In this document: one piece after another, positions 1,086 to 61,179 of the stretch | Layout: each line of letters starts with the position of its first letter | Position numbering within the stretch: the stretch's first letter is position 1 | Source of the DNA: Stylophora pistillata | Lineage: Eukaryota | Assembly (NCBI RefSeq): GCF_002571385.2 | Contig: NW_019217948.1 | Span: forward strand, 427,548-491,547 | DNA length: 64,000 bases | Direction: 5' to 3' | Notes under the pieces: generated by a model | What the model was told of the DNA's origin: nothing | The model's database searches: none | Seen by the model: the letters and a program-made list of their open reading frames with translations, nothing else | Position numbers and translations under genes: made by a program

Positions 1086-3135
1086 CGATAAAAGCGATTT
1101 AGGCTCGTTGGTTTTACTTATCTCCAGAATTCTTGGGAGAAACTTCAAATTGCTTGCGTTTCGTGCGATTGATAAGAATCAGTAACACTGCGAACGCACA
1201 GTAACATTAAAAAGATCTTGTTAAAGACGGGAAGTAAAACTATGTAGAATCGACATAAGGATTTTACTCCGGCGCGCGTAGAAATCTTTTTACCCCATCA
1301 AGGAACGATAATCTTACAGAAACTTGGCAGGTTACAATTCTGTTAATTTTGAAATAGAACTTCCAGTTTTCTATCTACAAGAAGAACTTGTAGGAGTGTT
1401 AAGTACAGATCTTTACAGAAATAATGAGAGTTAAGCCGATCAGGAACTCACCCGCGCGGCGGAAAGAAAGTGAATGAAAATATTATTAGTATTTTCCTAT
1501 CCATAGTATCCTCAATTAACACTTAAGACATATTTTGGACTTCTTATCTCGTAAATAAACCTCACAATAATCATAGGACATCCCAGAGTTGTTGAGTCAA
1601 CAATGAAAGTCGACATGCCGTATTTCCCGTGGTATTCTCTTTGTTAATTGAGGTTTCTGTAAACGTTTGTAGGTTAGCATATAGCAAAGGATCAGCACCT
1701 TCACTTAAACAATATTCTCCGGCCCATCAATACATCCGTCGAGAATATGGTGAACTAAATTTTCTTGTTGAAAGATATTCTTCCTTTCAAGGAACGATCT
1801 AAAGCAATTATTCCTAGAAAGCTAGTGCAGCTTGCAGAGGCTAACAAAGGATACCTACATATTTCACAATGCAGACAACGGTGACTTAGTGCATGACTAC
1901 TGTTCACCCGATTTAGGAAAAGTTTCATACTAAAACAAGGATGGCGAAAATGGCTAGTGAATTGCTTTCGCCCGCTCAACCGTAGCGGTACATCTGCTAA
2001 GTACCTTTTCTCGTCGGTAAGGCAACCAAAGGAAGGGGAACAGAGTACGGTCATGTCGATAATATTTGGAAACAAAGTATGCCACTGCAGGGCTAAGAAC
2101 TGAAGAAAAAAGTGTAAAACGTAATACTTTGCTTCTTTGAAATAGGAAAAGTTGATTTAATACTAATCACGTCTTTCTCTCTCTTCTTCTTTCTCATGGG
2201 ATCTGATTTTGAACTCCCGAATAAGAAGAATAAAAGCTCACGGTAACAATCTCCCGAAATACCCTTTGGCCCTGGTAAATTATGCGGGTTATCAGCATAT
2301 CGAGTCCAAGTGGTCTTAGAGGGAATGAATGAAACCTCGATTCAGTAAGTTCAACGACTGGATTTTATTAATCTGCTTGACGCATAATATTTCTATGAAC
2401 TAAGAAATAAATAATAGGTCTAGTAGGAACGCAAAAAATTTCGAACGTTCATATATAGCTAATCAACACAGGCGAGGAGGACGTGGTTGATAACATATAT
2501 ACACTTGCACATTAACATGCTTTTCAAAAAATGTATTTTCAAATTTTCAAAGAAAATTTGTTGCTTAAAATTAAATTTTAGAGAAACAACAGTAGGTTAA
2601 GCAAGATTTCTGAGTTGGTGTAGTCGCACATGAGCCTACTTAAGATCGCAAAGCTGCCTTCTTGAGAGAGTGGGTTTACAACAAAGCTGTGGGTATTTAA
2701 ATGTGCAAAGTTCGCCGAAATGGCATCTACGAAGCTAAGTGGTGCAAAGTGTAGAAATAATTCATCAAATCTTATATTTTGTCTTGCTTTCGATTAGATG
2801 CAACACCCGGGACGCGATGGAAAAACTAACTCTGGTGAAACTTAAAATTATCGATGCTGCGAACTCCCTAAGATTGTGCTTTCATGCGCATCAGCTCTAC
2901 CACCCCTACCTATATTGAGTTCTCTGACAAAAAGTATAACTTTCAGTATCAAAACGGCCACAGGGAATGTACATGCCTCCATAAAACACGTCTACAAGAC
3001 TTTGTGTTTCTAAACAGCACTGAGCACTGGTTGATCGGCTTTCCATTTTCAGTGATCACGGCAGCCAATCCAAATTCCAATAGTGGAAGTTTCGTTATCG
3101 CTCGAATAAATATGTCAGTTGATTTATATGCTGAT

Positions 3136-3225
3136 TGACGAAGGGCTAACGTTCGGAAACGTCAGCTTCTTAACTCTTTACGGTAGCCAATTTACAATTT
3201 CAACTTATTTCATATTATCAAATTA
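3136..3225 (+). mobile_element. Degenerate Penelope-like pLTR tail fragment with decayed hammerhead core
   Basis: TGACGAAGGGCTAACGTTCGGAAACGTCAGC...CCAATTTAC matches the tails at 9942, 22921 and 42952. Confidence 0.75.
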
Positions 3226-3311
3226 CTGTATAAGTGTTATTGCTGGAGAAAAGTAGCTAACAGGACTTTGAAATCATGAGGGTGAATGTATCTATGTGGA
3301 CGTCACAGTTT

Positions 3312-5731
3312 TCAAGATGAGCAATATCCTCGAACTATCATACAGTTAGCAGTTAAGATACTAGCGTCAAACTTTGCCATTCCAGTGTGCGTGGTCCAGC
3401 TGGGGTCGTCGTCCTCTTCGTGTACTTCTTTGCGCCATCTTGTTCGTCTGTTTTGAAACCATGTTCTAACTTGGGCTTCAGTAAGGCTTATTTCCGTGGC
3501 TAGTTTACACCGTCGAGACTTGGAGATGTATTTCTCGTTGATAAACTCTTCTTCAAGTTTCTGGAGCTGTTCTGGCGAGAAAAGAGGCCGTTGTTTCTGT
3601 CTCTTGATATGTTTACGAGGTCTTCGTGGGTTTGCATAGTTTGCTGTAAGTAATTCAGTGAATAACATTATAAGCATTGAACTGCAACAGTAAATATTTG
3701 GTCTCCAAAAGAAAAGAATAAATTGATTTGGCACCTTATTCAAAAAGTAACAAGGAACTAAGACCAGAAGACCACAGTATGTGCCAGTTACTACAAATAA
3801 ACATAGGATTTTTCATACTCAAATTTCTGCATTTCTCCAGTTCGTAGAAACGATGCATTCGGAGCTATAAAGTGCCTATTGGACTGAGAAGTCAGAGTTC
3901 AGATGTGAGGAGTTGTCTACTTAACGTTTCCTTGCATTTTCTTTGCTCCTCATGACCTTCATGTCTGTTGTGATTTTTTTTTTTTACCAAAAGCCTGACT
4001 AGGAACATGAGATGCCATGTAAATGAGATGCCATGGAACATCAGTGCCTGTGTGATAATGAGTGCTTCTCACCCGCTACTAACGTAAATTTCCACACTCT
4101 CTTGGTGATGAGATTGAGCGATGTCAATTTCCACCTGTATCACAGGTTACGGTAAAAATTAATATGTTCTTTAATCTAAAAATGTCGATCGATATCACAA
4201 TAGTTTCAGTGAATCAGTGGAATTGACTGCATCTAGGGAGGATCCCGTTCAATCAGGCAAACCAGTGATTAGCAAGTCAATGTGTGCCAACTCAGCTTCT
4301 GAGGTTTCATTGTATTTTAATTAAACTAAGTGGAGATGTTTTCCATTTGTACGTATTATCACTAGTGTGCATGTGAGTGGCGAACACACGAACCCGGCGG
4401 AAAAGCTTATAGCTTACTCTTGGACAATAAAAACGGAACATCCGCTAGCGTCCTCCCATCTTCCGTCCACTTGAGCTTAAATTTTACGCTTCTGGAAATC
4501 AGTTCGAACTTTCCAAAATATTTCCGAAAGTGATTGATAATTTTAGCCATCGCTAATCATGTTTAGGTAATTCAGTTAGTACCTTTGCGGTCGTTTTCGC
4601 AACTGCTTTGTTACATTTAAACAATACTGTTGTGATTACCGATGCAGTCTCTGAGATACAAGTGTCGGTTTTTTTCCTCTTTCAAAAGCTTGCAAACAGT
4701 GTCTACAGAAACAATGCCAAAGGGTCAGATCATGGGAAACCGGCTTCTGTAAAATAAGATGAAACTTCTGTTTATGTCTTTTCCTGTTCTGAATCGGAGC
4801 AATTAAAAGGTCGGTAAACACCCCTTTTAATTACCCACTGAAAATGTAATGTTTCACGGAGTTCCTCTTCGAGTAAATAAATGTGACACTTCGCCTTTTT
4901 TCGAAAAATTATACGGTAGGGGCCTTTTGTCAGCCTTATATTCAAAGACACATTTCTGATTGTTCGCCTCCTTTTGTGTGTATTTTGGGATTCTGACGAA
5001 AACACTCTAAAATGTCACGGCCTAGGCTAAAGGTTTGCAAGCTATAGAAATATATATTTCATTGCGAGTATGATGCACTAAGTGGGCAAGCTTTTTTCAG
5101 CATCTTTTATAAAGAGAGCATTACCCTAAGAAGTAACCTTTGCTAAATAGAACGTGATCGACAAGAGAGAATACGATTTATAGATGCGTTTGTTTAAACT
5201 TAATTCAAGTTCAGAAATTGCATTCTGTGGAGCTGTTTATGAAGTGAAAGTAATGCTCTCCAAGAAGGTGCTATTTATTGTATCACGTTGAGACGGGTCA
5301 GTCATACATGATTTATTAGAGTTCCGATGGGAGTCTGCTAAGAAAGAAATGTTGCACCGCTATACTTACGTATTAATTACGGAGTTTGGAGGCTTCGTCA
5401 TATCTTTAAATTCTTATTTAAATTATAACTAACCTGGAGGGATGCCATGCCTCGAATATCTCGTAGCATAAACCCATGCCGGCCAGACACTGTTTAGGTC
5501 GAAGTTACCTTGTGCTACACTCAAACCTGTGCCCTCTTTCACGGGGCGTGTTTTCTTCGCCGAGTTTTCGCTGGCAATAGAAAGGTTAGCGACTCTTTTA
5601 TGTTCCTTGTCTTCACCTCGTTGGTCGTCGCAGAGACTTAGCAGGTTTTTAATGGAGAAAGGATGATTTAAGACGGATTTGGAAGGGATGACAGGGGAAA
5701 AAGCCGAGCCATATTTCACTCTGGAAGACAT
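3312..5731 (-). CDS. ANTP-class homeobox transcription factor, engrailed-like/NK-like; 2 exons (5731-5434, 3643-3312), about 209 aa
   Basis: ATG at 5731. eh1 motif HPFSIKNLL; EH2-like WPAWVYATRYS at 5485-5453. A phase-1 intron (G|GTTAGT...TTACAG|CA) joins in frame to the homeodomain at 3602-3423 (RQKQRPLFSPEQLQKLEEEF...QVRTWFQNRRTRWRKE). TGA at 3314-3312. Confidence 0.9.
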
Positions 5732-7821
5732 TGCCTCAACCGATTATGTTCGTAGCCAGCTAACCTTCTTACAAGCAGTCAACTTCTCGGCTGCTTGGCA
5801 CCAACATAAGTTAGTTTGGAGACTCTAGTCTCGCGCCTTGATAACCGGCTAATTATGACTCCGGAATACTGTAACTTAATTGGCTCGTTGAGACACTGTA
5901 AATAGGTTGCGGTCAGGAAGCAGACATCTACACTCCCTTTGAACTCCCGTGCTTTCGTCGGAGAACGCTTTCATCGCTTGTTGGAACAAACTTAAGAGTC
6001 ATACGGCGCAGTGAAATATAGACTAGATTTGGTGGGAGGGAGCAAAGTGGTATAAGTTATAAGTAGTGGGATTAGCCACAAGTAAATAAAAACAAACATC
6101 GCCACGCTAGCTTTCGTACTGAGGAGCACATTAAAAATATTCCGGTTCTCTTTGCAAGCAAACAGTTGCACAGTTAAACTTTATTTTTGGCCACTTTCCG
6201 GACGGGAAATCATAATTTGCAAAGCATTTGAATAGGTATTCAATGTAGAGACAAATTAATCTGGATTCGTAGATTGCGCACATAACATCGTGTGATCCAA
6301 TTCGGAAACGAATAGAAAGTTATTTGAGTCTACAATTGTAGGTCAACCTTATTCTGGCTAAGATCGTTTTTCAAAGAAAACAAAGTGCTAAAAGCAGGAA
6401 GGGTTAGGCTGGATAACTGCACAATGAAATTTCTAACAATACATTAGACCATGTAATGCCCATACGGCTCACGACATCCCTGCTGTTTAGGAGTAGTGGC
6501 ATCTTGTTTCTCAGCATGAACTCTGAGTGTCTCGACCACCCTTTCATCGCAGTACTTGTATAATGTTCTCCAGAAAATCTTACGAAGAGCCCGGGAAAGG
6601 GTTATGTCGGTTATGAATGACTTAGAAAATCAGAGTGGAGTAATTTTTTGTTTCAATGTTCCAATTTTTTCTCACAAAATTTGAAAACACAGAAAGAGGA
6701 TATACTTTCCCTTCCGGTTCACGTTAATGAAGTCTCTTGTCGTAGAAGAAGCACTGGATCCCAATGATCTCTTGATCAAACTGTAAAGAATAGGCCGGTT
6801 GAACTCAAAAATGATGATGCTCACTCATTACCAAACCTCGCTTAAAAAGAAAAAGAAAAGAACGCTTTATTCTTACTATACGGGCGCCTCAGACGTGCAG
6901 AAAAATCAAGACCTGGTAGATGCCATACCCCCGGAGGCTTACGATTGAGTGTTAAGGTGACACCGCGCCACCATTTGATAAATTTGTCTCAACCGACAGC
7001 ACTGGGAACAGTTTCTCACGAAAGATCAAAATAATAGAAAATCGCCAATGTCGGATGCATAGTATTTTAACTTTTAGAAATATTAAACTGGTTATAAATA
7101 TTAAAGATCAAAACTCAAGAATAAAGCTATTGATCCAATGTTATTCTCATGTTTGAGAAAAGCCAACTTAATTTGAAGTTATCTTCAGGCACGACTTCCC
7201 TCAAGACCACAGGATATGAGAAAAGCGATATATGATATTAAGGTATAAATTGAAGACTTTACATTGACTAGCGGTGTGTGCCGTACTGATGACGGGAACA
7301 TGTGGGTGTGTCATTCTTAATGAAAATCAACACGAACGTTTTTCAATCCTTGTCAAGGCAAGAACGAAACAGTTACCTTACGTCTGGTGCGTCGTTCATT
7401 TGTAATTATTCACGAACCAGTACTGCGTACATTTCCCCATGTTAACGCACCTCATTTTGTTTGGTAATTGTTTGCAATTGATGGATTGGAATTTAAAATC
7501 TCTTTACTGCCGAGTAAAAGCATTCCATCACGAACGATCGACTGTTTTCATTGAAAATAAAGCCGGAAGGAAGAACCTATGTTCTATGATACTTTCCATC
7601 CTTTTCCAGTTCTTAAACTGAAATGGCCCAGAGGTAAATGTTGTCAGAGTTTGATTTGCGCCACAGGTGGCAAGTAGCTCTACAGCTCTTGAACATTGAT
7701 TGCTCCACGGGGACTGTACCTTTTACCACTCTCTTTGATTGTGAAATCACAATCTAACTTTGGGATATTCTTCGCATCAACATATTTTCACTGAATTTTT
7801 CCTCCCAAGTCATCCTATTGT

Positions 7822-9344: not shown

Positions 9345-10030
9345 CAGAATGCCCCTCCTCTTGGTCAGAATGCCCCTCCTCTTGGTCAGAATGCCCCTCC
9401 TTTTGGTCAGAAGTTCTTTTGAGACTAATGACCAACCAGGCACTTTTAAATGCGCTCGTGCACGATACAAAACATGTCCTTTCATTCACAACGTTGATAA
9501 AATATCGGGACCTAAACGATCCATTAAGATCACCGATCACTTCACGTGCACCTCCGCTAACTTGCACTTATTGCAAAAAGATATACATCGGCGAAACAGG
9601 CAGAAGACTAGGTGACCGATTCCGAGAACACCTTCGAGACGTGGAAAGGAATGACAAGGACACATCGAAACCAGTCGCTAGACATTTTAATTTACCTAAT
9701 CATTCTAAGCAACATATGGCAATCTGCGGTCTTTCCTTACACTTAGGTAGCACGGAAAGCCGTAAAAATCTTGAACAAAAGCTCATCTTTCAAACCGGCA
9801 GTCTAAATCCCACAGGGATCAACGAACGCTTTTCATTCCACTAATTTATTCTTGTTTTTCTCGTTGCCATGTTCCCACCAATAACGTAGCTCCATTTTCT
9901 GCCTTTAAAAGCACACACAACCCACAATTCCTCTATTCGCTCCGACGAAGGGCTAACGCTCGAAACGTCAGCTTTTGTAATCGTTACGGTGGCCAATTTA
10001 CCATTTCAACTTTGTTGATATATCCAAATT
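9345..10030 (+). mobile_element. 5'-truncated Penelope-like retroelement: GIY-YIG endonuclease C-terminus plus pLTR with hammerhead motif
   Basis: Frameshifted ORFs encode KCARARYKTCPFI and CTYCKKIYIGETGRRLGDRFREH...PVARHFN...GINERFSF. The tail carries CCGACGAAGGGCTAACGCTCGAAACGTCAGC (9942-9972). A 21-bp triplication marks the 5' junction. Confidence 0.9.
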
Positions 10031-10045
10031 AAGAGNNNNNNNNNN

Positions 10046-27979: not shown

Positions 27980-30842
27980 GCAATTGCACGCTACAAAATA
28001 TCGACGCAGACCGTGGCTACAAGTCAAATTCCCAAGTTCTTCTGTGTTATTTCCAGTTATCTACAGACCGCCAGACGCCGGTGAATTCTTTGATGTTCTC
28101 GGTGCCACCTCAGAAAAAGCTTGGCTTAAAACGTTTAATATAATGCTACTTGGGGACTTCAACGGTGACTTTAAGGCGGAATCTGAACAGTGTACTAACG
28201 CCAGAAAACTATGCTCTACTCTTGAAACGTTTAATATACAATATGTGGTGAATGCAAACCCTAGATAAACACAAACAACGAGTACGTTGATAGACCTTAT
28301 TATCACAACAAGGACTGATCTCATAAGCAAGTGTGGTGTTTTGCCTTTGAGAGTTTCAGACCACACTGTGGTATACGCAACGAGGAAGCTGAAGAAGAAA
28401 GGCCGCAACCGTAGTACATCAAAACAAGAGATTACAGGAAATTTGACGCTGAAAATTTCGGGAGGAACAGAATCTACACCTTTCCATGTGGCGTTAGTTT
28501 TTGAAGTGCCAGATTATGTCTTATGGGCATGGCAAACTTTGTTTAACAGAATTTGTGACGTCGCCCAGAAAGAAGTCAAGATAAGAAGTAAACTGGCTCC
28601 TTGGATAACAAACGAGAGGCGTTACATGATTAATAAAAGATACAAGATTTTCAAGGCAGCAGTTAGCACCAAACGTCCTGAGCTTCGGTCAAAATACAAG
28701 AAAGGCAGAAATGTGGTCACGTCAACTTTGCGAACAGCTAAAGCATCCTAGTTTACCAAAACGTTTGAAGAAGTAAGGAAATATAGTACTTACTGGAACT
28801 TAATTAACAAAGCTACAATTCGCTCAGCACGTAACAGAACAATAGGCCTCCTTAAGAGAACCGATGGCAGTTTTGCTCTTATGGAGAAAGAAAAAGTAAA
28901 GATAATGAACGCATACTTTTCCCAGATCCGTGAGAAATTAGCTAAGTCACTACCAATGCCACCGCAGCTTGCTTCTGTAGATGGCAACATATCGCCTACC
29001 TTAAAGCCCTATTTCAATCACAAACCGTTCTGTTGAAGAAAAGATAAATAAACTTAAGACTAATAAGTCCGTTGGACCTACTGACATCTCGCCTAAACTT
29101 CTCAAATTGGCATGGGAAAGGCTATTGTACCAACATTGGTCAATACAGTACAATACAATACATAGCTTATATAGCGCAACGCTTCTCAAAGATCCAGCGG
29201 CGCTTTACAATGATAGTGATAGAAAAATATCATCAATTAAGAATTAAAGTGAATTAAAAAACTAGTGGTCAACCTTTATAATTACAGCATTGAACGGAGA
29301 ACTGTCTTTTTCCCTGTGAAAGACTGCTCGATTAACTCCGCTTTTCAAGAAGGACGATGAAGCAGATTGTGGAAATTATCGACCTGTCTCCCTTTTAAGC
29401 GTACCTAGTGAGATCTTGGAAGCAGAAATAAAGGATAGACAGATGCAGCACGCTTTCGTCGACAATCAGTTAACCACAGAGAAGCAATGGGCTTACCGAC
29501 GCGGCCACTCTACTGAGCTCTTCCTTGTACATCTGACAAAAATGTGGAGGAGAGCTTTAGACTCCGGTAATGTGGTCGCAGTAGCTTTTGTGGACTTCAG
29601 AAAAGCGTTTGACGGTGGCTCACACGATGTCTCAGTGAAGAACCTGAAATATAATTTTGCTATTACGGGCATGTCGCTAGATGGATTAGGGACTACTTGA
29701 GTGGTAGAATGCAGTTCACTCTACTTAATGGTGTCAAATCTGACATGTTACCAGTAACAAGTGGAATACCACAAGGATCTGTATTAGGCCCTATTTTGTT
29801 CACTTTATTTGCTAATGATCTGCCCGCCGCGATAACCAAGGGATCTTTGTTTATGTACGCGCACGATATGTTAGTTTTCTGCACCTAGGTGGTGCCTAGA
29901 GAACCGCCTAACACCTAACCCGGCTAAGAGCGAAATTATTTTAATTAGTACACAAGACACTATTAGACCACTACCTCCAGTACTTTTGGGTAAATCGGTA
30001 CTAAGCTTTGTTACAAAATCTCGTCTTCTTTGAATGATCGTGAACGACAAGCTTACTTGGATACCACATATGCTAGAACTAAAGAAAAACTTTGCAAAAA
30101 AAATAGACACATTGAAGTGCTCAAGGTTTCTGCCCAAATATCCTTTTAATGTTCTATTTTAGTCTAATATTACCTTCTGCGAAGTATGATATTATTTTAT
30201 GGGGTTTCAGTACAAATTCAGATCTTCTGTACTCAATTGAAAAATCTCACGGTAGAGTAGAGCATCTGGGAGAGCTCTCAACGTTGCGGGATGGGATACA
30301 ATCAGTTTCGATTACAAATTTCAAATATTTAAACTATTTTATAGAGCAAGTAAAGTCCCACTACCTGAGTGTCTAATTAATAGCATATTCATACGACGGG
30401 AATGTAGCTACTCATTAAGAGTTCAAAAAGCAATCACGACACCTAGATTCAATTCGAGATTGTTAAAAGACTCACCGGTATATCGAGGTTCAGCGGTATG
30501 GAAGTTTGTTAACCATCATGTCAAAGGTAGTATTGACCTCAAGAAACTTCGTAGAGTACTCAGGAGAAATGATCACTTCAGGTGCTTTGCTTTCACGAGT
30601 TTATCGGGTTCAATGGTTAAGAACAGATTAACTGATTACACGTATTTTTAAGAAGATTTTATTAGCTTCTTAGTTCGCATTTTAAGAATTGTAATCTATT
30701 AGAATGTTGTTAGAAATGTGTTTTAGTTATAATTAATAGTTTTTAATTGGACGAGTAATTATTTTGTTAGTACACGGCCCCACAAGCTTTTTAGCTTAAT
30801 TCTTATCGTGTATGAATAAAGATTCTAGTCTATTATATTCTA
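27980..30842 (+). mobile_element. 5'-truncated decayed LINE (CR1/L2 group), ORF2 pseudogene with APE and RT
   Basis: APE motifs YRPP, LLGDFN, IDLI and SDH. RT motifs [32 protein letters not shown] and MYAHD (YADD). Multiple stops and frameshifts. The 3' tail has a TACACG/CGTGTA stem, AATAAA and TTCTA repeats. Confidence 0.9.
29144..29265 (-). mobile_element. L2-type 3' tail fragment inserted in the LINE
   Basis: Minus strand GTAAAGCGCC...GCGCTATATAAG followed by (TATTG)n. It is flanked by a TGGTCAA duplication (29137-29143 and 29266-29272). Confidence 0.6.
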
Positions 30843-38395: not shown

Positions 38396-40626
38396 CTATG
38401 AACGTATCTCGTTGAAACAAGTCTGTATATACGTATAGGCACGGGAGCTTGCTGCAGGCGCTGACAATTCGTCATTATAGGAACTTGTTCCCGACAAATT
38501 TTGGTGACAGTTCTTGTTTGTTTGAGATACTGTTGTGGCCACTTGATCTTGCATTTCCTTTCTCCATTTTGTTCTTCTATTTTGGAACCACGTTTTAACT
38601 TGAGTTTCTGTAAGACCCAACTCTGTGGAAAGCTCTGCACGCTTGCTCTCAGAGATGTAACGACGCTTTGTAAATTCCCTTTCCATCGTTTGTACCTGGT
38701 TTTGGGAAAATAGCGGACGCTGCTTCTTCTTTCTAGAGAAACTTCTACGTCTTGGAAGATTTATATATGGAGAAAAACCTGCCAAAGGAATAGCGCATGT
38801 TTCCAGTTCTGTATGTTTTTAAATTAATGTGACAGGCAAGGGAAAAAATGAAAGAAGTCCAAGGGGGTAAGATTGTAATTCCCAAAATTGTTTCTACCTT
38901 AATTATACCCAGTATAAGAAGAATTTCAGTTTTCATCGAGTCTTTATTATCTTGCCAGTTGGGAGAAGCACCATAGACTGTTTGAGAGCTCAATAAAAAC
39001 CGAATTGATTCCCAAAATTTGATTTGGTTTATTATAATTGTGCACACTTCTTAAATGTCTGTCTACACTTTGCTTTAGAGGTCACATCTTATGCAGTCTT
39101 CGTGTGTTTATTTCTTTTCTTTTCCGTTCTCTATTTGCAATAAAATTACCAAGTCTTGCAACTCGGCTCCGCAATTGGAAACTTTTTCAAACAACGGTGT
39201 TTCCATTTCAAAGAAATATTTCTGTTAGTACTTTCTCGGCCGACAGATTTTAAAGCCTATTGCATTCAACGAAAATACGAATCTTAGAATTTTGTTATGG
39301 CTTTGGCTGTAATCTAGATATATTTAGTTGTATGAACAAAAACTCGTGAAGGTGCCTATTGTAAACAAGTTGATTCTTTTTTAAATGTTCAACGCTAATG
39401 CTACAAGAATAGGTTGGTGAATGAGACTAAATTATTTGTCAGGGTGTATTACAAAATTCAGAAGGAAAGGATGTCAAACGCTTCCGTGTGCGTAGCGCCG
39501 CAATTAGGCAACTCAAAATATTGCGCGTGTACACAACAAATGTAACGATCTGCAGCCACTCTATAGCATTATCTGGAAGAGCTTCTGTACATAAGAGTGT
39601 TCAAGGCCCAAGTTCCAGTACAACCACAACGCAATGGGCTTGAATATCAATGGTTTCAACACCTTGGAATTTTGACAAGTAATAATTCAAACATGAAAAC
39701 TTGCCAAACTGTGAGCAAACCGCTTTTATGGCCACTCACTCGGAAGTTAATAGTAAAAGAAAACCAGCTTCGCGCGGGTAAATTCAGCGTTCAAATCATA
39801 ATGTACGGACAAGAAAATAAAATAATTTCCTTTTGTTAGCGTTATGAAGAAAAAAATCGAAGGATTTACCCTTCAATCCTAAAGAGTGATAGTTGCTAAT
39901 TCTAGGAAAATAATTCCTGATCAAGTATCGATTGTTTCGTTTCTACTTTAAAGCGGAATTTTTGTCAATTCACTTGAATAAATCGAGAATCTTTGGCCAA
40001 GGTGTTTTCATCTGCAGACAACTGTTGCTTAACATCGCTTGCATCGACGAAATAAGCAGAAACGTCAGTCATCCTCCCCTTCAACTTAACAACCATTAGT
40101 AGAGAATGCAAACTGCTGAAAAAAACTGTCGCAAAATCGAACCAAAAATTCTCACGACTCATTTCTTGTTTGCTCGCTTCTGTTTATAACAACAAAATTC
40201 CAGAGAAGGAAAGCTCTCTACAGTCTAAAATCCAACTTCGCAACAATATTCATCAAGTTAACACGAAGCAGTAACTTTGCACTTACCATGGAAGTGTTCA
40301 TAACTTTGCATAAAACTTGTGTTGCAAATCCACGTGGGAAAGTTGGCCTGTGCAGTGGGATCTGCTGACCAATTTAAACTGATGCCACTCAGTGGAGAGC
40401 CCAGACCAGCGTAAGGATACCGCATTAATGGCGGCGGATTCATGGCGTAAGTGATTGGAGTCACGATGGGTCTTATAATGGAAACTTTTGCATCTTCGAT
40501 TTCTTCTCCTGATACTCTCGGAAACGCAGTCAAGGCTCTTTCATCTTGGAGGTTAAGAATGTTCTTTATGGAAAACGAACTTCTTCTCGGGGCCTGAAAA
40601 TAGACATCTCTGTTTGCTAAGTCCAT
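38396..40626 (-). CDS. ANTP-class homeobox transcription factor, paralogue of the 3312-5731 gene; 2 exons (40626-40287, 38778-38396), about 240 aa
   Basis: ATG at 40626. eh1 SFSIKNIL; hexapeptide-like FPTWICNTSF; phase-1 intron G|GTAAGT...TGGCAG|GT. Homeodomain at 38731-38552 (KKKQRPLFSQNQVQTMEREF...QVKTWFQNRRTKWRKE) is identical to the first gene at 37/59 positions. Confidence 0.92.
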
Positions 40627-42861
40627 GTCGTAGCTTGCCAAAACAAGGGTTACTTGGGCGGTCAATCTGAGATAATGTGCACCCCGAGTCAAGGTATTCT
40701 CTCTAAATATGTTGCGGACTTGACGCCTGCGTACTAACGTCTAATTAATCACATCAATCAGTGTTAGGAAAACTTAATTGTGTAGCGGCACACTTAGAGA
40801 ATCATGTCATCTTCTTTTTAAACTGGTTTGAGTGACGACTAAAAGCTGTTCGGAGAATTCCAAATGATTGAAGTCAACATTTTCAACCCGCAGTATTTAT
40901 ATTCTTTTCGAAAACTGCTGACCACTCAGGTAAATTTAGGCTGGAAGCGTCTGTCCCCGTTTGCTTCCGGTTATCGTAATTTCCGGTATGAAGAGGCTAG
41001 ATGCACAAAATCTGTATAATCTAATATAACGACCGGAAGTGGCGGAGAAATAAACATCTCTTTAGCGCTAGAAACATATTTCACACATTCGCCTGAGAGA
41101 GCTGATTTGTAGCTGGCAGCTAATATCCAACTTATCAATCACAAGTTAAAAAGAATCTTATCATCTTCTTTTGTACTCAATTAAAACGAAAAAGCTGCCG
41201 CGTAAAAGTATGTGATTGCAATAATTCGACCTTAATTGGCCAGATTTTTAAATTTACACTTGAGGATTTCCTAAAGTTTAGTTTTCCGATTTTTTGTCAA
41301 CGCGTCAAGTAATATAATACAGTTGCGTATGGTTAAATAGTTTCTGTAGAATGACTAGGCACGAAAATCACATTTCCTTATATTTGAAAAAATATCTTAT
41401 TTTGATGAATTTCTCTACTTGTTAAGAGTCTCAGCTTGATACTAAGCTGATGGCCCATAATAAAAGCAACGCAGTGATTGGAATTTAATCCACTTTATGA
41501 TACCTAGACGGGCTTATCGTTTAGTGGAGACAGACAGTGCGCAAGGGATAGGCCGGTCGGCCTATGCGGAACACGACTGGAGGAAGGCTTATAAGTCTTC
41601 ACTGAATTACGTCAATAGAACAAATCCAACCTCGACACAAAAATGTTGTTTTTTCAGCCTTTTTTTACCTTGGTTCCACATCAAGACTTAGTTTCTTTAC
41701 AAGAGAGCTTTAATCGTTTCCCATCCTACAGTCATGGATTCTGGGGCAAACCAAACAAATTAAAAAAAAAAAATGGTAAAAAAAATTCAAAATAAACAGC
41801 TGGCAAAGTTTAATGCATTGTTATATGCGTACAGTGACATTACTTTCCATGCTTTTAGCGTCTTTCCTCCTTACAGAGTCACGCCTTCCTTGACTCGGTA
41901 AGAGGTAATTACCAGCTTATTTCTGGAATTGCTGACGTCCTTTGAAAACCACATACTGTGAAAGAAGGCGGAGAAAGGCGGCAAAGGGAGGGCCTTGGGA
42001 GGAATTTTGAAGTACACACCACTAAATAGATTAACGTTTCATCCCTTGGACAGCTTCACGAAAATTCCTGTCTATGAGCACTGACAGATGCATTTCCAGT
42101 TATATGTAAGCTGTTGCTAAAATTTTAAATCTAGCTTACAACAAATCGATAGCAGGATGGCGTTACTGATTGATGTAATATGGAACTGTAACTCTTTCAT
42201 ATGTTATTCTACATCGACCTATTCGGCTCATTATCCTTCAAATTTTTCCGTTTTTGTTATTCAAAGGGATTTCTGGAAAACGAATTTCAATGAGTTATAT
42301 CCTGAATTCAGCCTCTGAAGACAAACAGTCCTTTGAAATCCCAAAAAAGAAGATTAGGGAACCAAACACTCCTTATAAAATTAACACAAAAACGTTTTGA
42401 TGCGATCGATCTGTGATCTGGAAGGCTGAAAAACGTCCGCCAAATGGTGCGAATGTTGCCGTCCTCAGTAAACTGATCTAAATAGTTAACAATAACGGAC
42501 AGCCCAACATTTGTTGTCAGACACCATCTGATAGGAAGCTAATCCAGTGGAGTGCTGGGACAAGGAATGAAATCCGTCGTTGATGGTACACCTTCACCAG
42601 CCATTGCAGACTTTGATTAGTTGTCGGCTGACACTGTGAGAAAGTGCGACAAATTTTTTCACCAGGTCAATCAAACTCATGTTGATTGAAAGGTTTTAAA
42701 TGCAATTCTTAGTTTGTTTTACACTTTGGTCGAGTATTTTGAATGTGAACTTCTCGTAGTGTTTCCCTTCTTAAATTTTGCCTGTTCCACGCTCTCTATG
42801 AAATTGTGCTACCCCGTGATATGCCTTTGAATACAATTACAAATTCTGAAATCTATTTGTG

Positions 42862-43110
42862 ATTTGGATATATCAACAAAGTTGAAATGGTAAATTGGCC
42901 ACTGTAATGATTACAAAAGCTGACGTTTCGAGCGTTAGCCCTTCGTCGGAGCGACGAAGGACTAACGCTCGAAACGTCAGCTTTTGTAATCGTTACGGTG
43001 GCTAATTTACCATTTCAACTTTGTTGAATTTGTTGAATTATTTCGTTACTCCCACCGACGCAGCCCCAAANNNNNNNNNNNNAGTTTCTTTCGAAACTAT
43101 CAGCCTTTAT
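42862..43110. mobile_element. Head-to-head Penelope pLTR pair (76-bp palindrome arms) with target-site duplication
   Basis: 42873-42948 and 42952-43027 are inverted. The flanking direct repeat TATTTGTGATTTGG lies at 42854-42867 and 43111-43124. An N-gap lies inside. Confidence 0.85.

Positions 43111-49780: not shown

Positions 49781-61179
<11,399 letters not shown>

What the first reader, a model, noticed from the sequence alone, without database searches (positions are those of the whole stretch)
3312..5731. Candidate cnidarian engrailed relative: eh1 plus near-perfect Engrailed EH2 motif plus mosaic homeodomain
Seen: the spliced protein has eh1 (FSIKNLL), then WPAWVYATRYS, a phase-1 intron six codons later, a basic linker (PRRPRKHIKR) and a Q50 homeodomain. 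Established: WPAWVYCTRYS is the Engrailed EH2 motif that binds Pbx/Exd. En genes have the order EH1-EH2-intron-basic EH3-homeodomain. Clear engrailed orthologues have classically been regarded as missing from cnidarians. By-eye comparison: helices 1-2 (EQLQKL..EF...YI...RR..LA.E.SL.EAQ) resemble En, but helix 3 (QVRTWFQNRRTRWR; T47, T54) is Tlx/NK-like, and no EH5 (LMAQGLYNH) is present. Inference: either a derived engrailed orthologue or a relic of the lineage from which En arose; homeodomain-only classification would call it NK/Tlx-like. Orthologues may already carry En-like, Tlx-like or orphan labels in anthozoan surveys, which I cannot check.
Basis: partly seen in the sequence, partly recalled or inferred. 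Interest (0 to 1): 0.9.

Follow-up and report, generated by a model that had tools for sequence, protein, structure and literature searches.

The report
Coral Abox homeobox gene, engrailed's sister family
This is a real, expressed two-exon coral homeobox gene carrying engrailed-type cofactor motifs, but it belongs to the Abox family next to engrailed rather than to engrailed itself, and a 2023 preprint already described such anthozoan genes.

Summary
On the minus strand, exon 1 (5731-5434) encodes eh1 (FSIKNLL) and WPAWVYATRYS. A phase-1 GT..AG intron follows, and exon 2 (3643-3312) encodes a basic linker and a Q50 homeodomain. RNA-seq reads and contigs join 5434 to 3643 on the expected strand.

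The gene is conserved in stony corals and, with a weaker EH2, in sea anemones. It is not engrailed proper. There is no EH5, and the genome has no credible engrailed C-terminal signature. Homeodomain identity is 20-25/60 to 14 engrailed sequences and 29-33/60 to bilaterian Abox.

An ML homeodomain tree puts the anthozoan clade with Abox (99/88), with engrailed as a weakly supported sister (71/51). AU tests cannot formally reject the alternatives. Hemichordate Abox carries WPSWIYATRYTR, the same RRPRK linker spacing and the same phase-1 intron. The "mosaic" homeodomain residues T47 and T54 are also the Abox state.

The gene sits beside Gbx, with a paralogue on Gbx's other side. Copley (bioRxiv 2023) already reported EH2-bearing anthozoan Abox genes next to Gbx, and RefSeq labels the orthologues "engrailed-like".

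- RNA proof of the splice junction.
- The post-EH2 phase-1 intron is shared by engrailed, Abox and this gene, and is predicted in coral NK1.
- Bilaterian Abox has an EH5-like motif that the anthozoan genes lack.

The parts
5434..5731 (-). Exon 1 coding part (99 codons plus the first base of the split codon), starting at the ATG at 5731
   Evidence: in-frame stop five codons upstream. RNA contigs reach about 5840, so the 5' UTR is at least about 110 nt.
5690..5707 (-). N-terminal motif SAFSPV (aa 9-14), shared with hemichordate Abox
   Evidence: S9, A10 and F11 are invariant in alignment A1, which includes Saccoglossus Abox. Among 142 Abox-like proteins held, only 4 match the loose pattern and only the two Saccoglossus models carry it N-terminally. 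It is absent from 4 mRNA-like engrailed ORFs.
5639..5659 (-). eh1 motif FSIKNLL (aa 25-31), the presumed Groucho/TLE-binding repression motif
   Evidence: It matches the eh1-like start of Pfam HNF_C, below that family's cut-off. The function is inferred from the literature on eh1.
5435..5485 (-). EH2 motif WPAWVYATRYS plus RHGIPP (aa 83-99), the presumed Pbx/Exd-binding motif
   Evidence: The WPAWVYATRY core is identical in all seven full-length coral orthologues that retain exon 1. It is partly kept in Exaiptasia and degenerate in Nematostella.
3644..5433 (-). Intron of 1790 nt, GT..AG, phase 1
   Evidence: plus the RNA joint 3643/5434 in three runs. Abox of Saccoglossus and Lytechinus has a phase-1 intron at the same distance from the homeodomain: the split codon plus 13 residues.
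3312..3643 (-). Exon 2 coding part including the stop codon (3312-3314)
3603..3629 (-). Basic linker PRRPRKHIK. Its RRPRK ends three residues before homeodomain position 1, as in bilaterian Abox.
3423..3602 (-). Homeodomain of 60 residues with Q50, E17, E19, K28, R30, T47, R52 and T54
   Evidence: Pfam PF00046 E 1.3e-19. Residue comparison. Trees.
3315..3347 (-). C-terminal motif NCMIVRGYCSS, conserved in hexacoral orthologues and not seen in the aligned Saccoglossus Abox or in the post-homeodomain stretch of engrailed; function unknown
2400..3311 (-). 3' UTR, at least this long. RNA depth continues to the edge of the laid stretch.
   Evidence: tables 2 and 8.
17575..17751 (+). Gbx homeobox, the neighbouring gene about 12 kb away
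   Evidence: tblastn. The best solved-structure match is human GBX-1 at 97.8 bits. The only intervening hit is a tandem double-engrailed construct (89 bits), and the next ordinary single homeodomain scores 64.5 bits.
38396..40692 (-). Paralogue B on the other side of Gbx. Its exon 1 carries eh1 FSIKNIL and a degenerate EH2 (FPTWICNTSF). Its exon 2 carries a homeodomain with E28.
   Evidence: It is the closest paralogue in the genome (83.8 bits, 55%) and groups with the gene in the trees.

Best explanation
This is the coral member of the anthozoan EH2-bearing branch of the Abox family (Abox = 'absent in Olfactores'; Drosophila CG34031). Abox is the ANTP-class family that stands next to engrailed. 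The protein most likely acts as a sequence-specific transcriptional repressor. The Q50 homeodomain would bind TAAT-type sites, the eh1 motif would recruit Groucho/TLE, and the double-tryptophan EH2 motif would dock into the TALE homeodomain of Pbx for cooperative DNA binding. Shown here: gene structure, transcription, conservation, family placement, linkage to Gbx, and the presence of a Pbx gene in this genome. Inferred only: Groucho and Pbx binding, DNA specificity, repressor activity and developmental role.
For: Structure and transcription are covered. Orthologues with the same layout occur in Pocillopora, Orbicella, Oculina and unnamed coral assemblies. Exaiptasia and Nematostella have weaker EH2 motifs.

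The family anchor is the Drosophila CG34031 (Abox) homeodomain, given in Table S1 of PMC10726417. It is the same family as the echinoderm, hemichordate, arthropod and annelid proteins.

Homeodomain identity of the coral gene is 29-33/60 to Abox and 20-25/60 to 14 engrailed sequences.

The ML tree has 95 homeodomains under LG+C20 and includes 14 engrailed sequences recovered by reference from metagenome contigs. The anthozoan EH2 and E28 genes form one clade (99/86). That clade plus bilaterian Abox has 99/88. Engrailed joins outside it at 71/51.

Non-homeodomain characters shared with Saccoglossus Abox are eh1, WPSWIYATRYTR, the N-terminal SAFSP motif, and RRPRK ending three residues before the homeodomain. 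The phase-1 intron lies at the split codon plus 13 residues before homeodomain position 1.

E17, R52, E19 and R30 match the states Copley lists for Abox. The Abox-Gbx adjacency he reports for cnidarians is present here. A Pbx gene (PBC domain, 105.7 bits) is present in the genome.
Against: The reverse search is not reciprocal at the homeodomain level. Saccoglossus Abox hits the two coral Nedx-like homeoboxes best (80 and 77 bits), then paralogue B (75), and this gene is only tenth (63.8 bits).

The anthozoan genes lack the post-homeodomain AQRQGLW-type motif found in 97 of 115 Abox-like proteins counted. They also lack the intron inside the homeodomain seen in Saccoglossus and Lytechinus Abox.

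With 60 columns the AU test does not reject engrailed plus anthozoans as a clade (p 0.318).

Bilaterian Nedx, Msxlx and other families were represented only by coral sequences or not at all. No binding or expression-pattern data exist.
Confidence: 0.7

Rival explanations
1. Pro-orthologue of both engrailed and Abox. The cnidarian-bilaterian ancestor had one En/Abox gene beside Gbx. It duplicated in tandem on the bilaterian stem, and engrailed's homeodomain then diverged fast. The coral gene and its paralogues would descend from the unduplicated gene.
For: Copley infers a single ancestral EN/ABOX gene and reports En-Abox adjacency in Saccoglossus and Lytechinus. Bilaterian Abox and engrailed share an EH5-like motif after the homeodomain (QGLW versus QGLY at similar spacing) that all the anthozoan genes examined lack. 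Engrailed and Abox have the intron in a Gly codon 17 residues from the first Trp. The two window paralogues belong to one anthozoan clade, which fits anthozoan-specific duplication. The constrained tree is not formally rejected (AU p 0.065).
Against: The free ML tree joins the anthozoans to Abox to the exclusion of engrailed at 99/88. The constrained tree is 19.96 log-likelihood units worse. The En-Abox adjacency could not be checked here, because no neighbour lay within the 10-kb flanks. The EH5-like resemblance rests on a short motif.
Confidence: 0.2
2. A true but derived engrailed orthologue, with Abox a separate family lost or unrecognised in cnidarians.
For: The first 11 EH2 residues match engrailed at 10 positions. 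RefSeq names the orthologues engrailed-like. A language-model feature search of the N-terminal part lists an 'Engrailed (Fragment)' cluster first (0.90, a lead only). The AU test does not reject engrailed plus anthozoans (p 0.318).
Against: There is no EH5, and PF10525 has no credible hit in the genome: 22.6 bits in a 19-residue frame on a contig with no listed homeobox match, and 18.1 bits. The engrailed-specific homeodomain states K17, I47, K52, A54 and I56 are absent, and at these positions the gene has the Abox state. Homeodomain identity to engrailed is only 20-25/60. The tree places engrailed outside the Abox plus anthozoan clade.
Confidence: 0.05
3. An anthozoan orphan ANTP gene that merely keeps ancestral eh1 and EH2 motifs, with no special kinship to Abox or engrailed.
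For: EH2-type motifs also occur in cnidarian Msx, NK1 and Msxlx. Coral NK1 has WHPWMAATRF followed by a predicted phase-1 intron at the equivalent place. These characters are therefore probably ancestral and not diagnostic. The reverse homeodomain search is not reciprocal.
Against: The clade with Abox has 99/88 support (99/96 without engrailed). The E19/R30 polarity is of the Hox-like type, not that of Msx or NK1. The RRPRK spacing and the N-terminal SAFSP motif are shared with hemichordate Abox. The gene is adjacent to Gbx.
Confidence: 0.05

Closest known systems
Abox homeobox family (Drosophila CG34031; hemichordate, echinoderm, arthropod and annelid Abox), and the anthozoan EH2-bearing Abox genes described by Copley, bioRxiv 10.1101/2023.03.14.532566
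   Same: Both have eh1 and a double-Trp EH2 with YATRY (Saccoglossus). Both have a phase-1 intron at the split codon plus 13 residues before the homeodomain, and RRPRK three residues before the homeodomain. They share homeodomain residues E17, E19, R/K30, T47, R52 and T54. The gene joins Abox in the ML clade (99/88) and sits next to Gbx, as reported for Acropora.
   Different: Homeodomain identity is only 29-33/60. The post-homeodomain AQRQGLW-type motif is missing. There is no intron inside the homeodomain. The start of the homeodomain reads QRPLF where Abox has PRQAY. The gene has a lineage-specific C-terminal CMIVRGYC motif. The family is duplicated in anthozoans: this genome has three members, two of them with E28.
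Engrailed (En; EH1-EH5)
   Same: Both have EH1. The EH2 is nearly identical over 11 residues. Both have a phase-1 intron just after EH2, a basic linker (EH3-like), E19/R30 polarity, and membership of the Gbx-linked (EHGbox) neighbourhood.
   Different: There is no EH5. The homeodomain lacks K17, I47, K52, A54 and I56. Identity is 20-25/60. Engrailed has Cys where this gene and Abox have Ala in YxTRY. Engrailed falls outside the Abox plus anthozoan clade.
Cnidarian NK1 and Msx with EH2-like motifs
   Same: Both have eh1 plus a double-Trp motif upstream of the homeodomain. Coral NK1 has a predicted phase-1 intron at the equivalent place.
   Different: Their homeodomains have the opposite 19/30 polarity according to Copley, they fall in different tree positions, and they lie in the NK cluster on other contigs.

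Membership tests
Engrailed | EH5 / engrailed C-terminal signature directly after the homeodomain (Pfam PF10525) | tested here: not met
   Exon 2 has no PF10525 match at E<=1. The residues after the homeodomain are acidic and unrelated. Genome-wide there are only two weak hits, the better one on a contig with no listed homeobox match.
Engrailed | Engrailed-type recognition helix and homeodomain states (K52 with AKIKK; K17) | tested here: not met
   The gene has E17, T47, R52, T54 and W56, the same as Abox. The 14 engrailed sequences recovered all carry the KRAKIKK helix they were selected by, and the two compared directly have K17.
Engrailed | EH1 and EH2 (WPAW...TRYS) upstream of the homeodomain | tested here: met
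   These motifs are not exclusive to engrailed.
Engrailed | Phase-1 intron between EH2 and the basic linker | tested here: met
   In engrailed genomic contigs the acceptor reads cAG|GN-CCN, which is phase 1 in the Gly of ..PSS-G-PRSR. Loci L060 and L084 hold both exons. The coral gene has phase 1 one codon further on. Abox shares this intron and coral NK1 has a predicted one, so it is not diagnostic.
Engrailed | Groups with engrailed in phylogeny | tested here: not met
   Engrailed (100/98) lies outside the Abox plus anthozoan clade (99/88). The AU test cannot reject the alternative (p 0.318).
Abox | Homeodomain groups with bilaterian Abox (anchor: Drosophila CG34031) | tested here: met
   Support is 99/96 without engrailed and 99/88 with it. 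The anchor comes from Table S1 of PMC10726417.
Abox | E17-R52 salt bridge and E19/[RK]30 polarity (Copley's criteria) | tested here: met
   the criteria were read.
Abox | Reciprocal best hit with bilaterian Abox | tested here: inconclusive
   In the forward direction, Abox ranks among the best bilaterian single-homeodomain hits, alongside Noto-like proteins. In the reverse direction, the coral Nedx-like homeoboxes score higher and this gene is tenth.
Abox | Conserved post-homeodomain motif (A-Q-R-Q-G-L-W type) of bilaterian Abox | tested here: not met
   The motif is present in 97 of 115 Abox-like proteins counted and absent from all seven anthozoan genes aligned.
Abox | Adjacency to Gbx, as reported for cnidarian Abox | tested here: met
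   Contig C165 carries only three homeoboxes: this gene, Gbx and paralogue B, all within about 37 kb.

The most novel reading that the evidence does not exclude
The anthozoan gene would be the unduplicated descendant of the single En/Abox ancestor. Engrailed would then be a fast-evolving bilaterian tandem copy of an Abox-like gene. [quoted passage not shown] Functional work on this coral or Nematostella gene would then show what the engrailed lineage did before segmentation.
Probability: 0.2. Interest if true: 0.55.

Novelty: already known. Interest (0 to 1): 0.35.

Why it matters
Engrailed is a classic bilaterian patterning gene with no accepted cnidarian orthologue. This locus is the nearest cnidarian relative, so it bears on how the En/Abox/Gbx neighbourhood and the Pbx-cofactor motif arose. 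The core point has already been published as a preprint: EH2-bearing anthozoan genes that are Abox, next to Gbx. The remaining value lies in the supporting details found here and in a clear functional target. Those details are transcript proof of the junction, conservation of the post-EH2 intron phase in engrailed, Abox and this gene (with a predicted equivalent in coral NK1), and an EH5-like motif in bilaterian Abox. The result also warns that the RefSeq labels 'engrailed-1-B-like', 'ceh-9' and 'HMX3' for these orthologues are unreliable.

Tried and rejected
- A word-based protein search with the EH1/EH2 part of orthologue P0002 reached only close coral orthologues. It said nothing about other families.
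- The solved-structure search with exon 2 did not discriminate. BarH-like 2, PDX1, TLX2, Eve, GBX1 and engrailed chains all scored 45-60 bits.
- I looked for engrailed next to Abox in Saccoglossus and Lytechinus. No other gene lay within the 10-kb flanks, and the Saccoglossus gene sits at a contig end. The published adjacency is therefore unverified here.
- The Atlas feature search listed an 'Engrailed (Fragment)' cluster first at 0.90. I treated this as a lead only, and the structural part was meaningless (TM < 0.3).
- I first hoped the intron position would be engrailed- or Abox-specific. It is not, because coral NK1 has a predicted phase-1 intron at the equivalent place.
- I tested the N-terminal SAFSP motif as an Abox marker. 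Among 142 Abox-like proteins it is clear only in Saccoglossus, so it is weak evidence.
- I did not run complex prediction with Pbx. The coral Pbx homeodomain is split by an intron, and joined exon models were not to be sent to tools.
- The joined two-exon protein of this window was never submitted to any search. Exons were searched by reference, and database orthologue P0002 served as the full-length proxy.
Full report
**1. What is there**

On the minus strand an ORF runs from the ATG at 5731. An in-frame stop lies five codons upstream of it. The ORF encodes, in order:
- an N-terminal SAFSPV motif;
- eh1 (FSIKNLL, aa 25-31);
- a poorly conserved spacer;
- WPAWVYATRYS followed by RHGIPP (aa 83-99).

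The exon ends at 5434 with a GT donor. The acceptor AG is at 3645-3644 and the intron is phase 1. Exon 2 (3643-3312) encodes the linker PRRPRKHIK, a 60-residue Q50 homeodomain (3602-3423; PF00046, E 1.3e-19), an acidic stretch, and a C-terminal NCMIVRGYCSS.

**2. It is a working gene**

I laid four runs on 2400-6800. A joint that skips 3644-5433 appeared in three of them:
- 14 stranded raw reads with 13 different starts, all with the first mate on +, which fits a minus-strand RNA;
- an 866-nt contig from a polyA RNA library, covering 3186-3643 joined to 5434-5840;
- a contig from a third study whose RNA status is only guessed.

Depth over the intron is near zero in the raw-read run and continues through a 3' UTR of at least 900 nt. 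Full-length database orthologues carry the same junction residues.

**3. Conservation**

Orthologues at 77-99% identity over exon 2 occur in Pocillopora, Orbicella, Oculina and unnamed coral assemblies. Exaiptasia and Nematostella orthologues are at about 59%. This places the window in a pocilloporid stony coral.

In an alignment of ten anthozoan sequences plus Saccoglossus Abox, the eh1 core and P84, T90 and R91 are invariant. W83, W86, Y88, A89, Y92 and R94 are at least 90% conserved. EH2 is intact in stony corals. In Exaiptasia the first Trp is lost, and in Nematostella the motif is degenerate. RefSeq labels for the orthologues are 'engrailed-1-B-like', 'engrailed-2-A-like', 'ceh-9' and 'HMX3'. 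These are automatic names and they disagree with each other.

**4. Prior description**

Copley (bioRxiv 10.1101/2023.03.14.532566) searched cnidarians for EH2 motifs as engrailed candidates. He found them in Acropora and other anthozoans and concluded the following:
- By reciprocal searches and phylogeny, these genes are orthologues of bilaterian Abox.
- They keep the E17-R52 salt bridge and the E19/[RK]30 polarity.
- Abox was further duplicated in anthozoans, giving paralogues without EH2 and with E28.
- Abox lies next to Gbx in some cnidarians.
- The ancestor probably had a single EN/ABOX gene.

Pocillopora damicornis was among his core species. The preprint does not mention introns.

**5. 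Independent tests of family placement**

(a) Anchor. Table S1 of PMC10726417 gives the Drosophila CG34031 (Abox) homeodomain. It belongs to the same family as proteins found among the best bilaterian hits of exon 2. A further search extended that family to echinoderms, a hemichordate, arthropods, annelids, a nemertean and a nematode. No vertebrates appeared among the listed hits.

(b) Engrailed sequences. None was available by reference, so I scanned metagenome contigs for the engrailed recognition helix. This yielded 58 loci. Most encode textbook engrailed with EH5, and several are spliced transcripts that also carry EH1 and EH2.

(c) Identity. Over the 60 homeodomain positions this gene matches:

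| Compared with | Identical positions of 60 |
|---|---|
| 14 engrailed sequences | 20-25 |
| Bilaterian Abox | 29-33 |
| Anthozoan E28 paralogues (database) | 32-36 |
| Window paralogue B | 37 |

At 11 positions the gene agrees with Saccoglossus Abox but not with a vertebrate-type engrailed. These include E17, T47, R52, T54 and W56. At 6 positions the reverse holds. The 'Tlx/NK-like helix 3' is therefore also the Abox state.

(d) Tree. I built an ML tree from 95 homeodomains under LG+C20+F+G4. The rows were coral homeoboxes taken by reference from this genome, 14 engrailed, 14 Abox, the anthozoan genes and other top hits. The bootstrap had not fully converged.

| Clade | UFBoot / SH-aLRT |
|---|---|
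| Anthozoan EH2 and E28 genes | 99/86 |
| That clade plus bilaterian Abox | 99/88 (99/96 without engrailed) |
| Adding engrailed (itself 100/98) | 71/51 |
| Adding the two coral Nedx-like genes | 89/84 |

(e) AU tests. With only 60 columns these are weak. Engrailed plus anthozoans is not rejected (p 0.318). Engrailed plus bilaterian Abox with anthozoans outside is borderline (p 0.065, 19.96 log-likelihood units worse).

(f) Reverse search. Saccoglossus Abox against this genome hits the two Nedx-like homeoboxes best (80 and 77 bits). Paralogue B comes next at 75 bits, and this gene is tenth at 63.8. Reciprocity is not clean at the homeodomain level.

**6. Characters outside the homeodomain**

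Saccoglossus Abox has eh1, WPSWIYATRYTR, an N-terminal SAFSP motif, and RRPRK ending three residues before the homeodomain. The coral gene has all four.

The first intron of Saccoglossus and Lytechinus Abox is phase 1. It lies in a Gly codon that is followed by 13 residues before homeodomain position 1. The coral intron has the same phase and the same distance.

In the engrailed genomic contigs the acceptor reads cAG|GN-CCN. That is phase 1 in the Gly that follows ..RPSS, which is 17 residues from the first Trp, exactly as in Saccoglossus Abox. The coral gene is one residue longer.

This intron is probably not diagnostic. Coral NK1 has WHPWMAATRF followed by a canonical G|GTAAG donor, phase 1, 18 codons from the first Trp. 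That site is predicted and has no RNA check.

Bilaterian Abox carries a post-homeodomain motif ending QGLW in 97 of 115 proteins. MAFFT aligns it with the engrailed EH5 core QGLY. None of the seven anthozoan genes aligned has it.

Among 142 Abox-like proteins held, only 11 keep any WxxW upstream of the homeodomain, and only the two Saccoglossus models keep the full motif.

**7. Genomic context**

The window is C165:427548-491547 of a 398-Mb assembly. C165 holds only three homeoboxes:
- this gene;
- Gbx at 17575-17751 (+), whose best solved-structure match is human GBX-1 at 97.8 bits, against 64.5 for the next ordinary single homeodomain;
- paralogue B at 38396-40692 (-), with eh1, a degenerate EH2 and E28.

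A third family member lies on C116. My labels for the other contigs rest on reading the homeodomains by eye:
- C168 carries Nedx-Dlx-Nedx.
- C14 carries Hox genes, Evx, Ro and Mnx.
- C52 carries an NK cluster.

The engrailed C-terminal signature has no credible hit in the genome. A Pbx gene with a PBC domain is present on C43.

**8. Mechanism**

By analogy with engrailed, Hox and NK proteins, eh1 should recruit Groucho/TLE, and the two tryptophans of EH2 should bind the Pbx TALE homeodomain. Copley's text cites work showing that the EH2 tryptophans are required for the Exd/Pbx interaction. The Q50 homeodomain should bind TAAT-type sites, giving a cofactor-dependent repressor. All of this is inferred. 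Nothing here tests binding.

**9. Verdict**

The gene is real, expressed and conserved. It belongs to the En/Abox lineage, and the homeodomain tree and several extra-homeodomain characters place it with Abox.

Strict engrailed orthology is not supported, though 60 columns cannot formally exclude it. The pro-orthologue scenario remains a live rival. The finding duplicates a published preprint, so its novelty is low.

Noticed in passing
window 3140-3226 (+), inside the 3' UTR of the gene: This is one copy of an approximately 87-bp element that is highly repeated in the genome. The first look found 1186 candidates, at 85-93% identity, often as inverted pairs about 100 bp apart, which looks MITE-like. 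It explains the depth spike of several thousand and the many loose ends in the RNA contigs at 3135-3281.
   Followed up: partly
window 38396-40692 (-): Paralogue B has eh1 FSIKNIL and a degenerate EH2 (FPTWICNTSF). Its homeodomain has E28, the residue Copley notes is shared with engrailed. It is the closest paralogue of the gene and lies on the other side of Gbx.
   Followed up: partly
window 16799-17751 (+): This is the Gbx gene. The homeobox exon is at 17575-17751. A possible first exon at about 16799-17060 carries an eh1-like FSIESII.
   Followed up: partly
L005 (G000:C219:438000-447000), positions 3963-4020 and about 4518: Coral NK1 has an EH2-like WHPWMAATRF followed by a canonical phase-1 GTAAG donor in a Gly codon, at the same relative place as the intron of engrailed, Abox and this gene. 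This suggests the intron is older than these families. The splice site is predicted only.
   Followed up: partly
Bilaterian Abox proteins (for example P0327, P0153, P0155) and engrailed loci L051-L108: Bilaterian Abox carries a conserved motif after the homeodomain (A-Q-R-Q-G-L-W type, 97 of 115 proteins). It aligns with the engrailed EH5 core (A-Q-G-L-Y). This may be an EH5 homologue shared by engrailed and Abox, and the anthozoan genes lack it.
   Followed up: partly
G000 contigs C168 (389-428 kb), C14 (414-678 kb), C52 (489-574 kb), C23 (507-540 kb): The genome has several homeobox clusters: Nedx-like, Dlx, Nedx-like on C168; Hox genes, Evx, Ro and Mnx on C14; Lbx, NK3/4, NK2 and Msx on C52; four Meox-like genes on C23. 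The family labels come from my reading of the homeodomains.
   Followed up: no
window 54767-55420 (-); 9419-9844 (+); 28287-28751 (+): The first is a DEAH-box RNA helicase exon of the DHX8/Prp22 type, judged by its motifs. The other two are ORF fragments that look like transposable-element remains. Two short N runs lie at 10036-10045 and 43071-43082.
   Followed up: no
P0138 / P0179 (ENA and Logan contigs, organism unknown): This homeodomain protein is sister to the whole anthozoan EH2 plus E28 clade in the tree (95/80 and 99/86). It may be a member from another cnidarian group. Its source was not identified.
   Followed up: no
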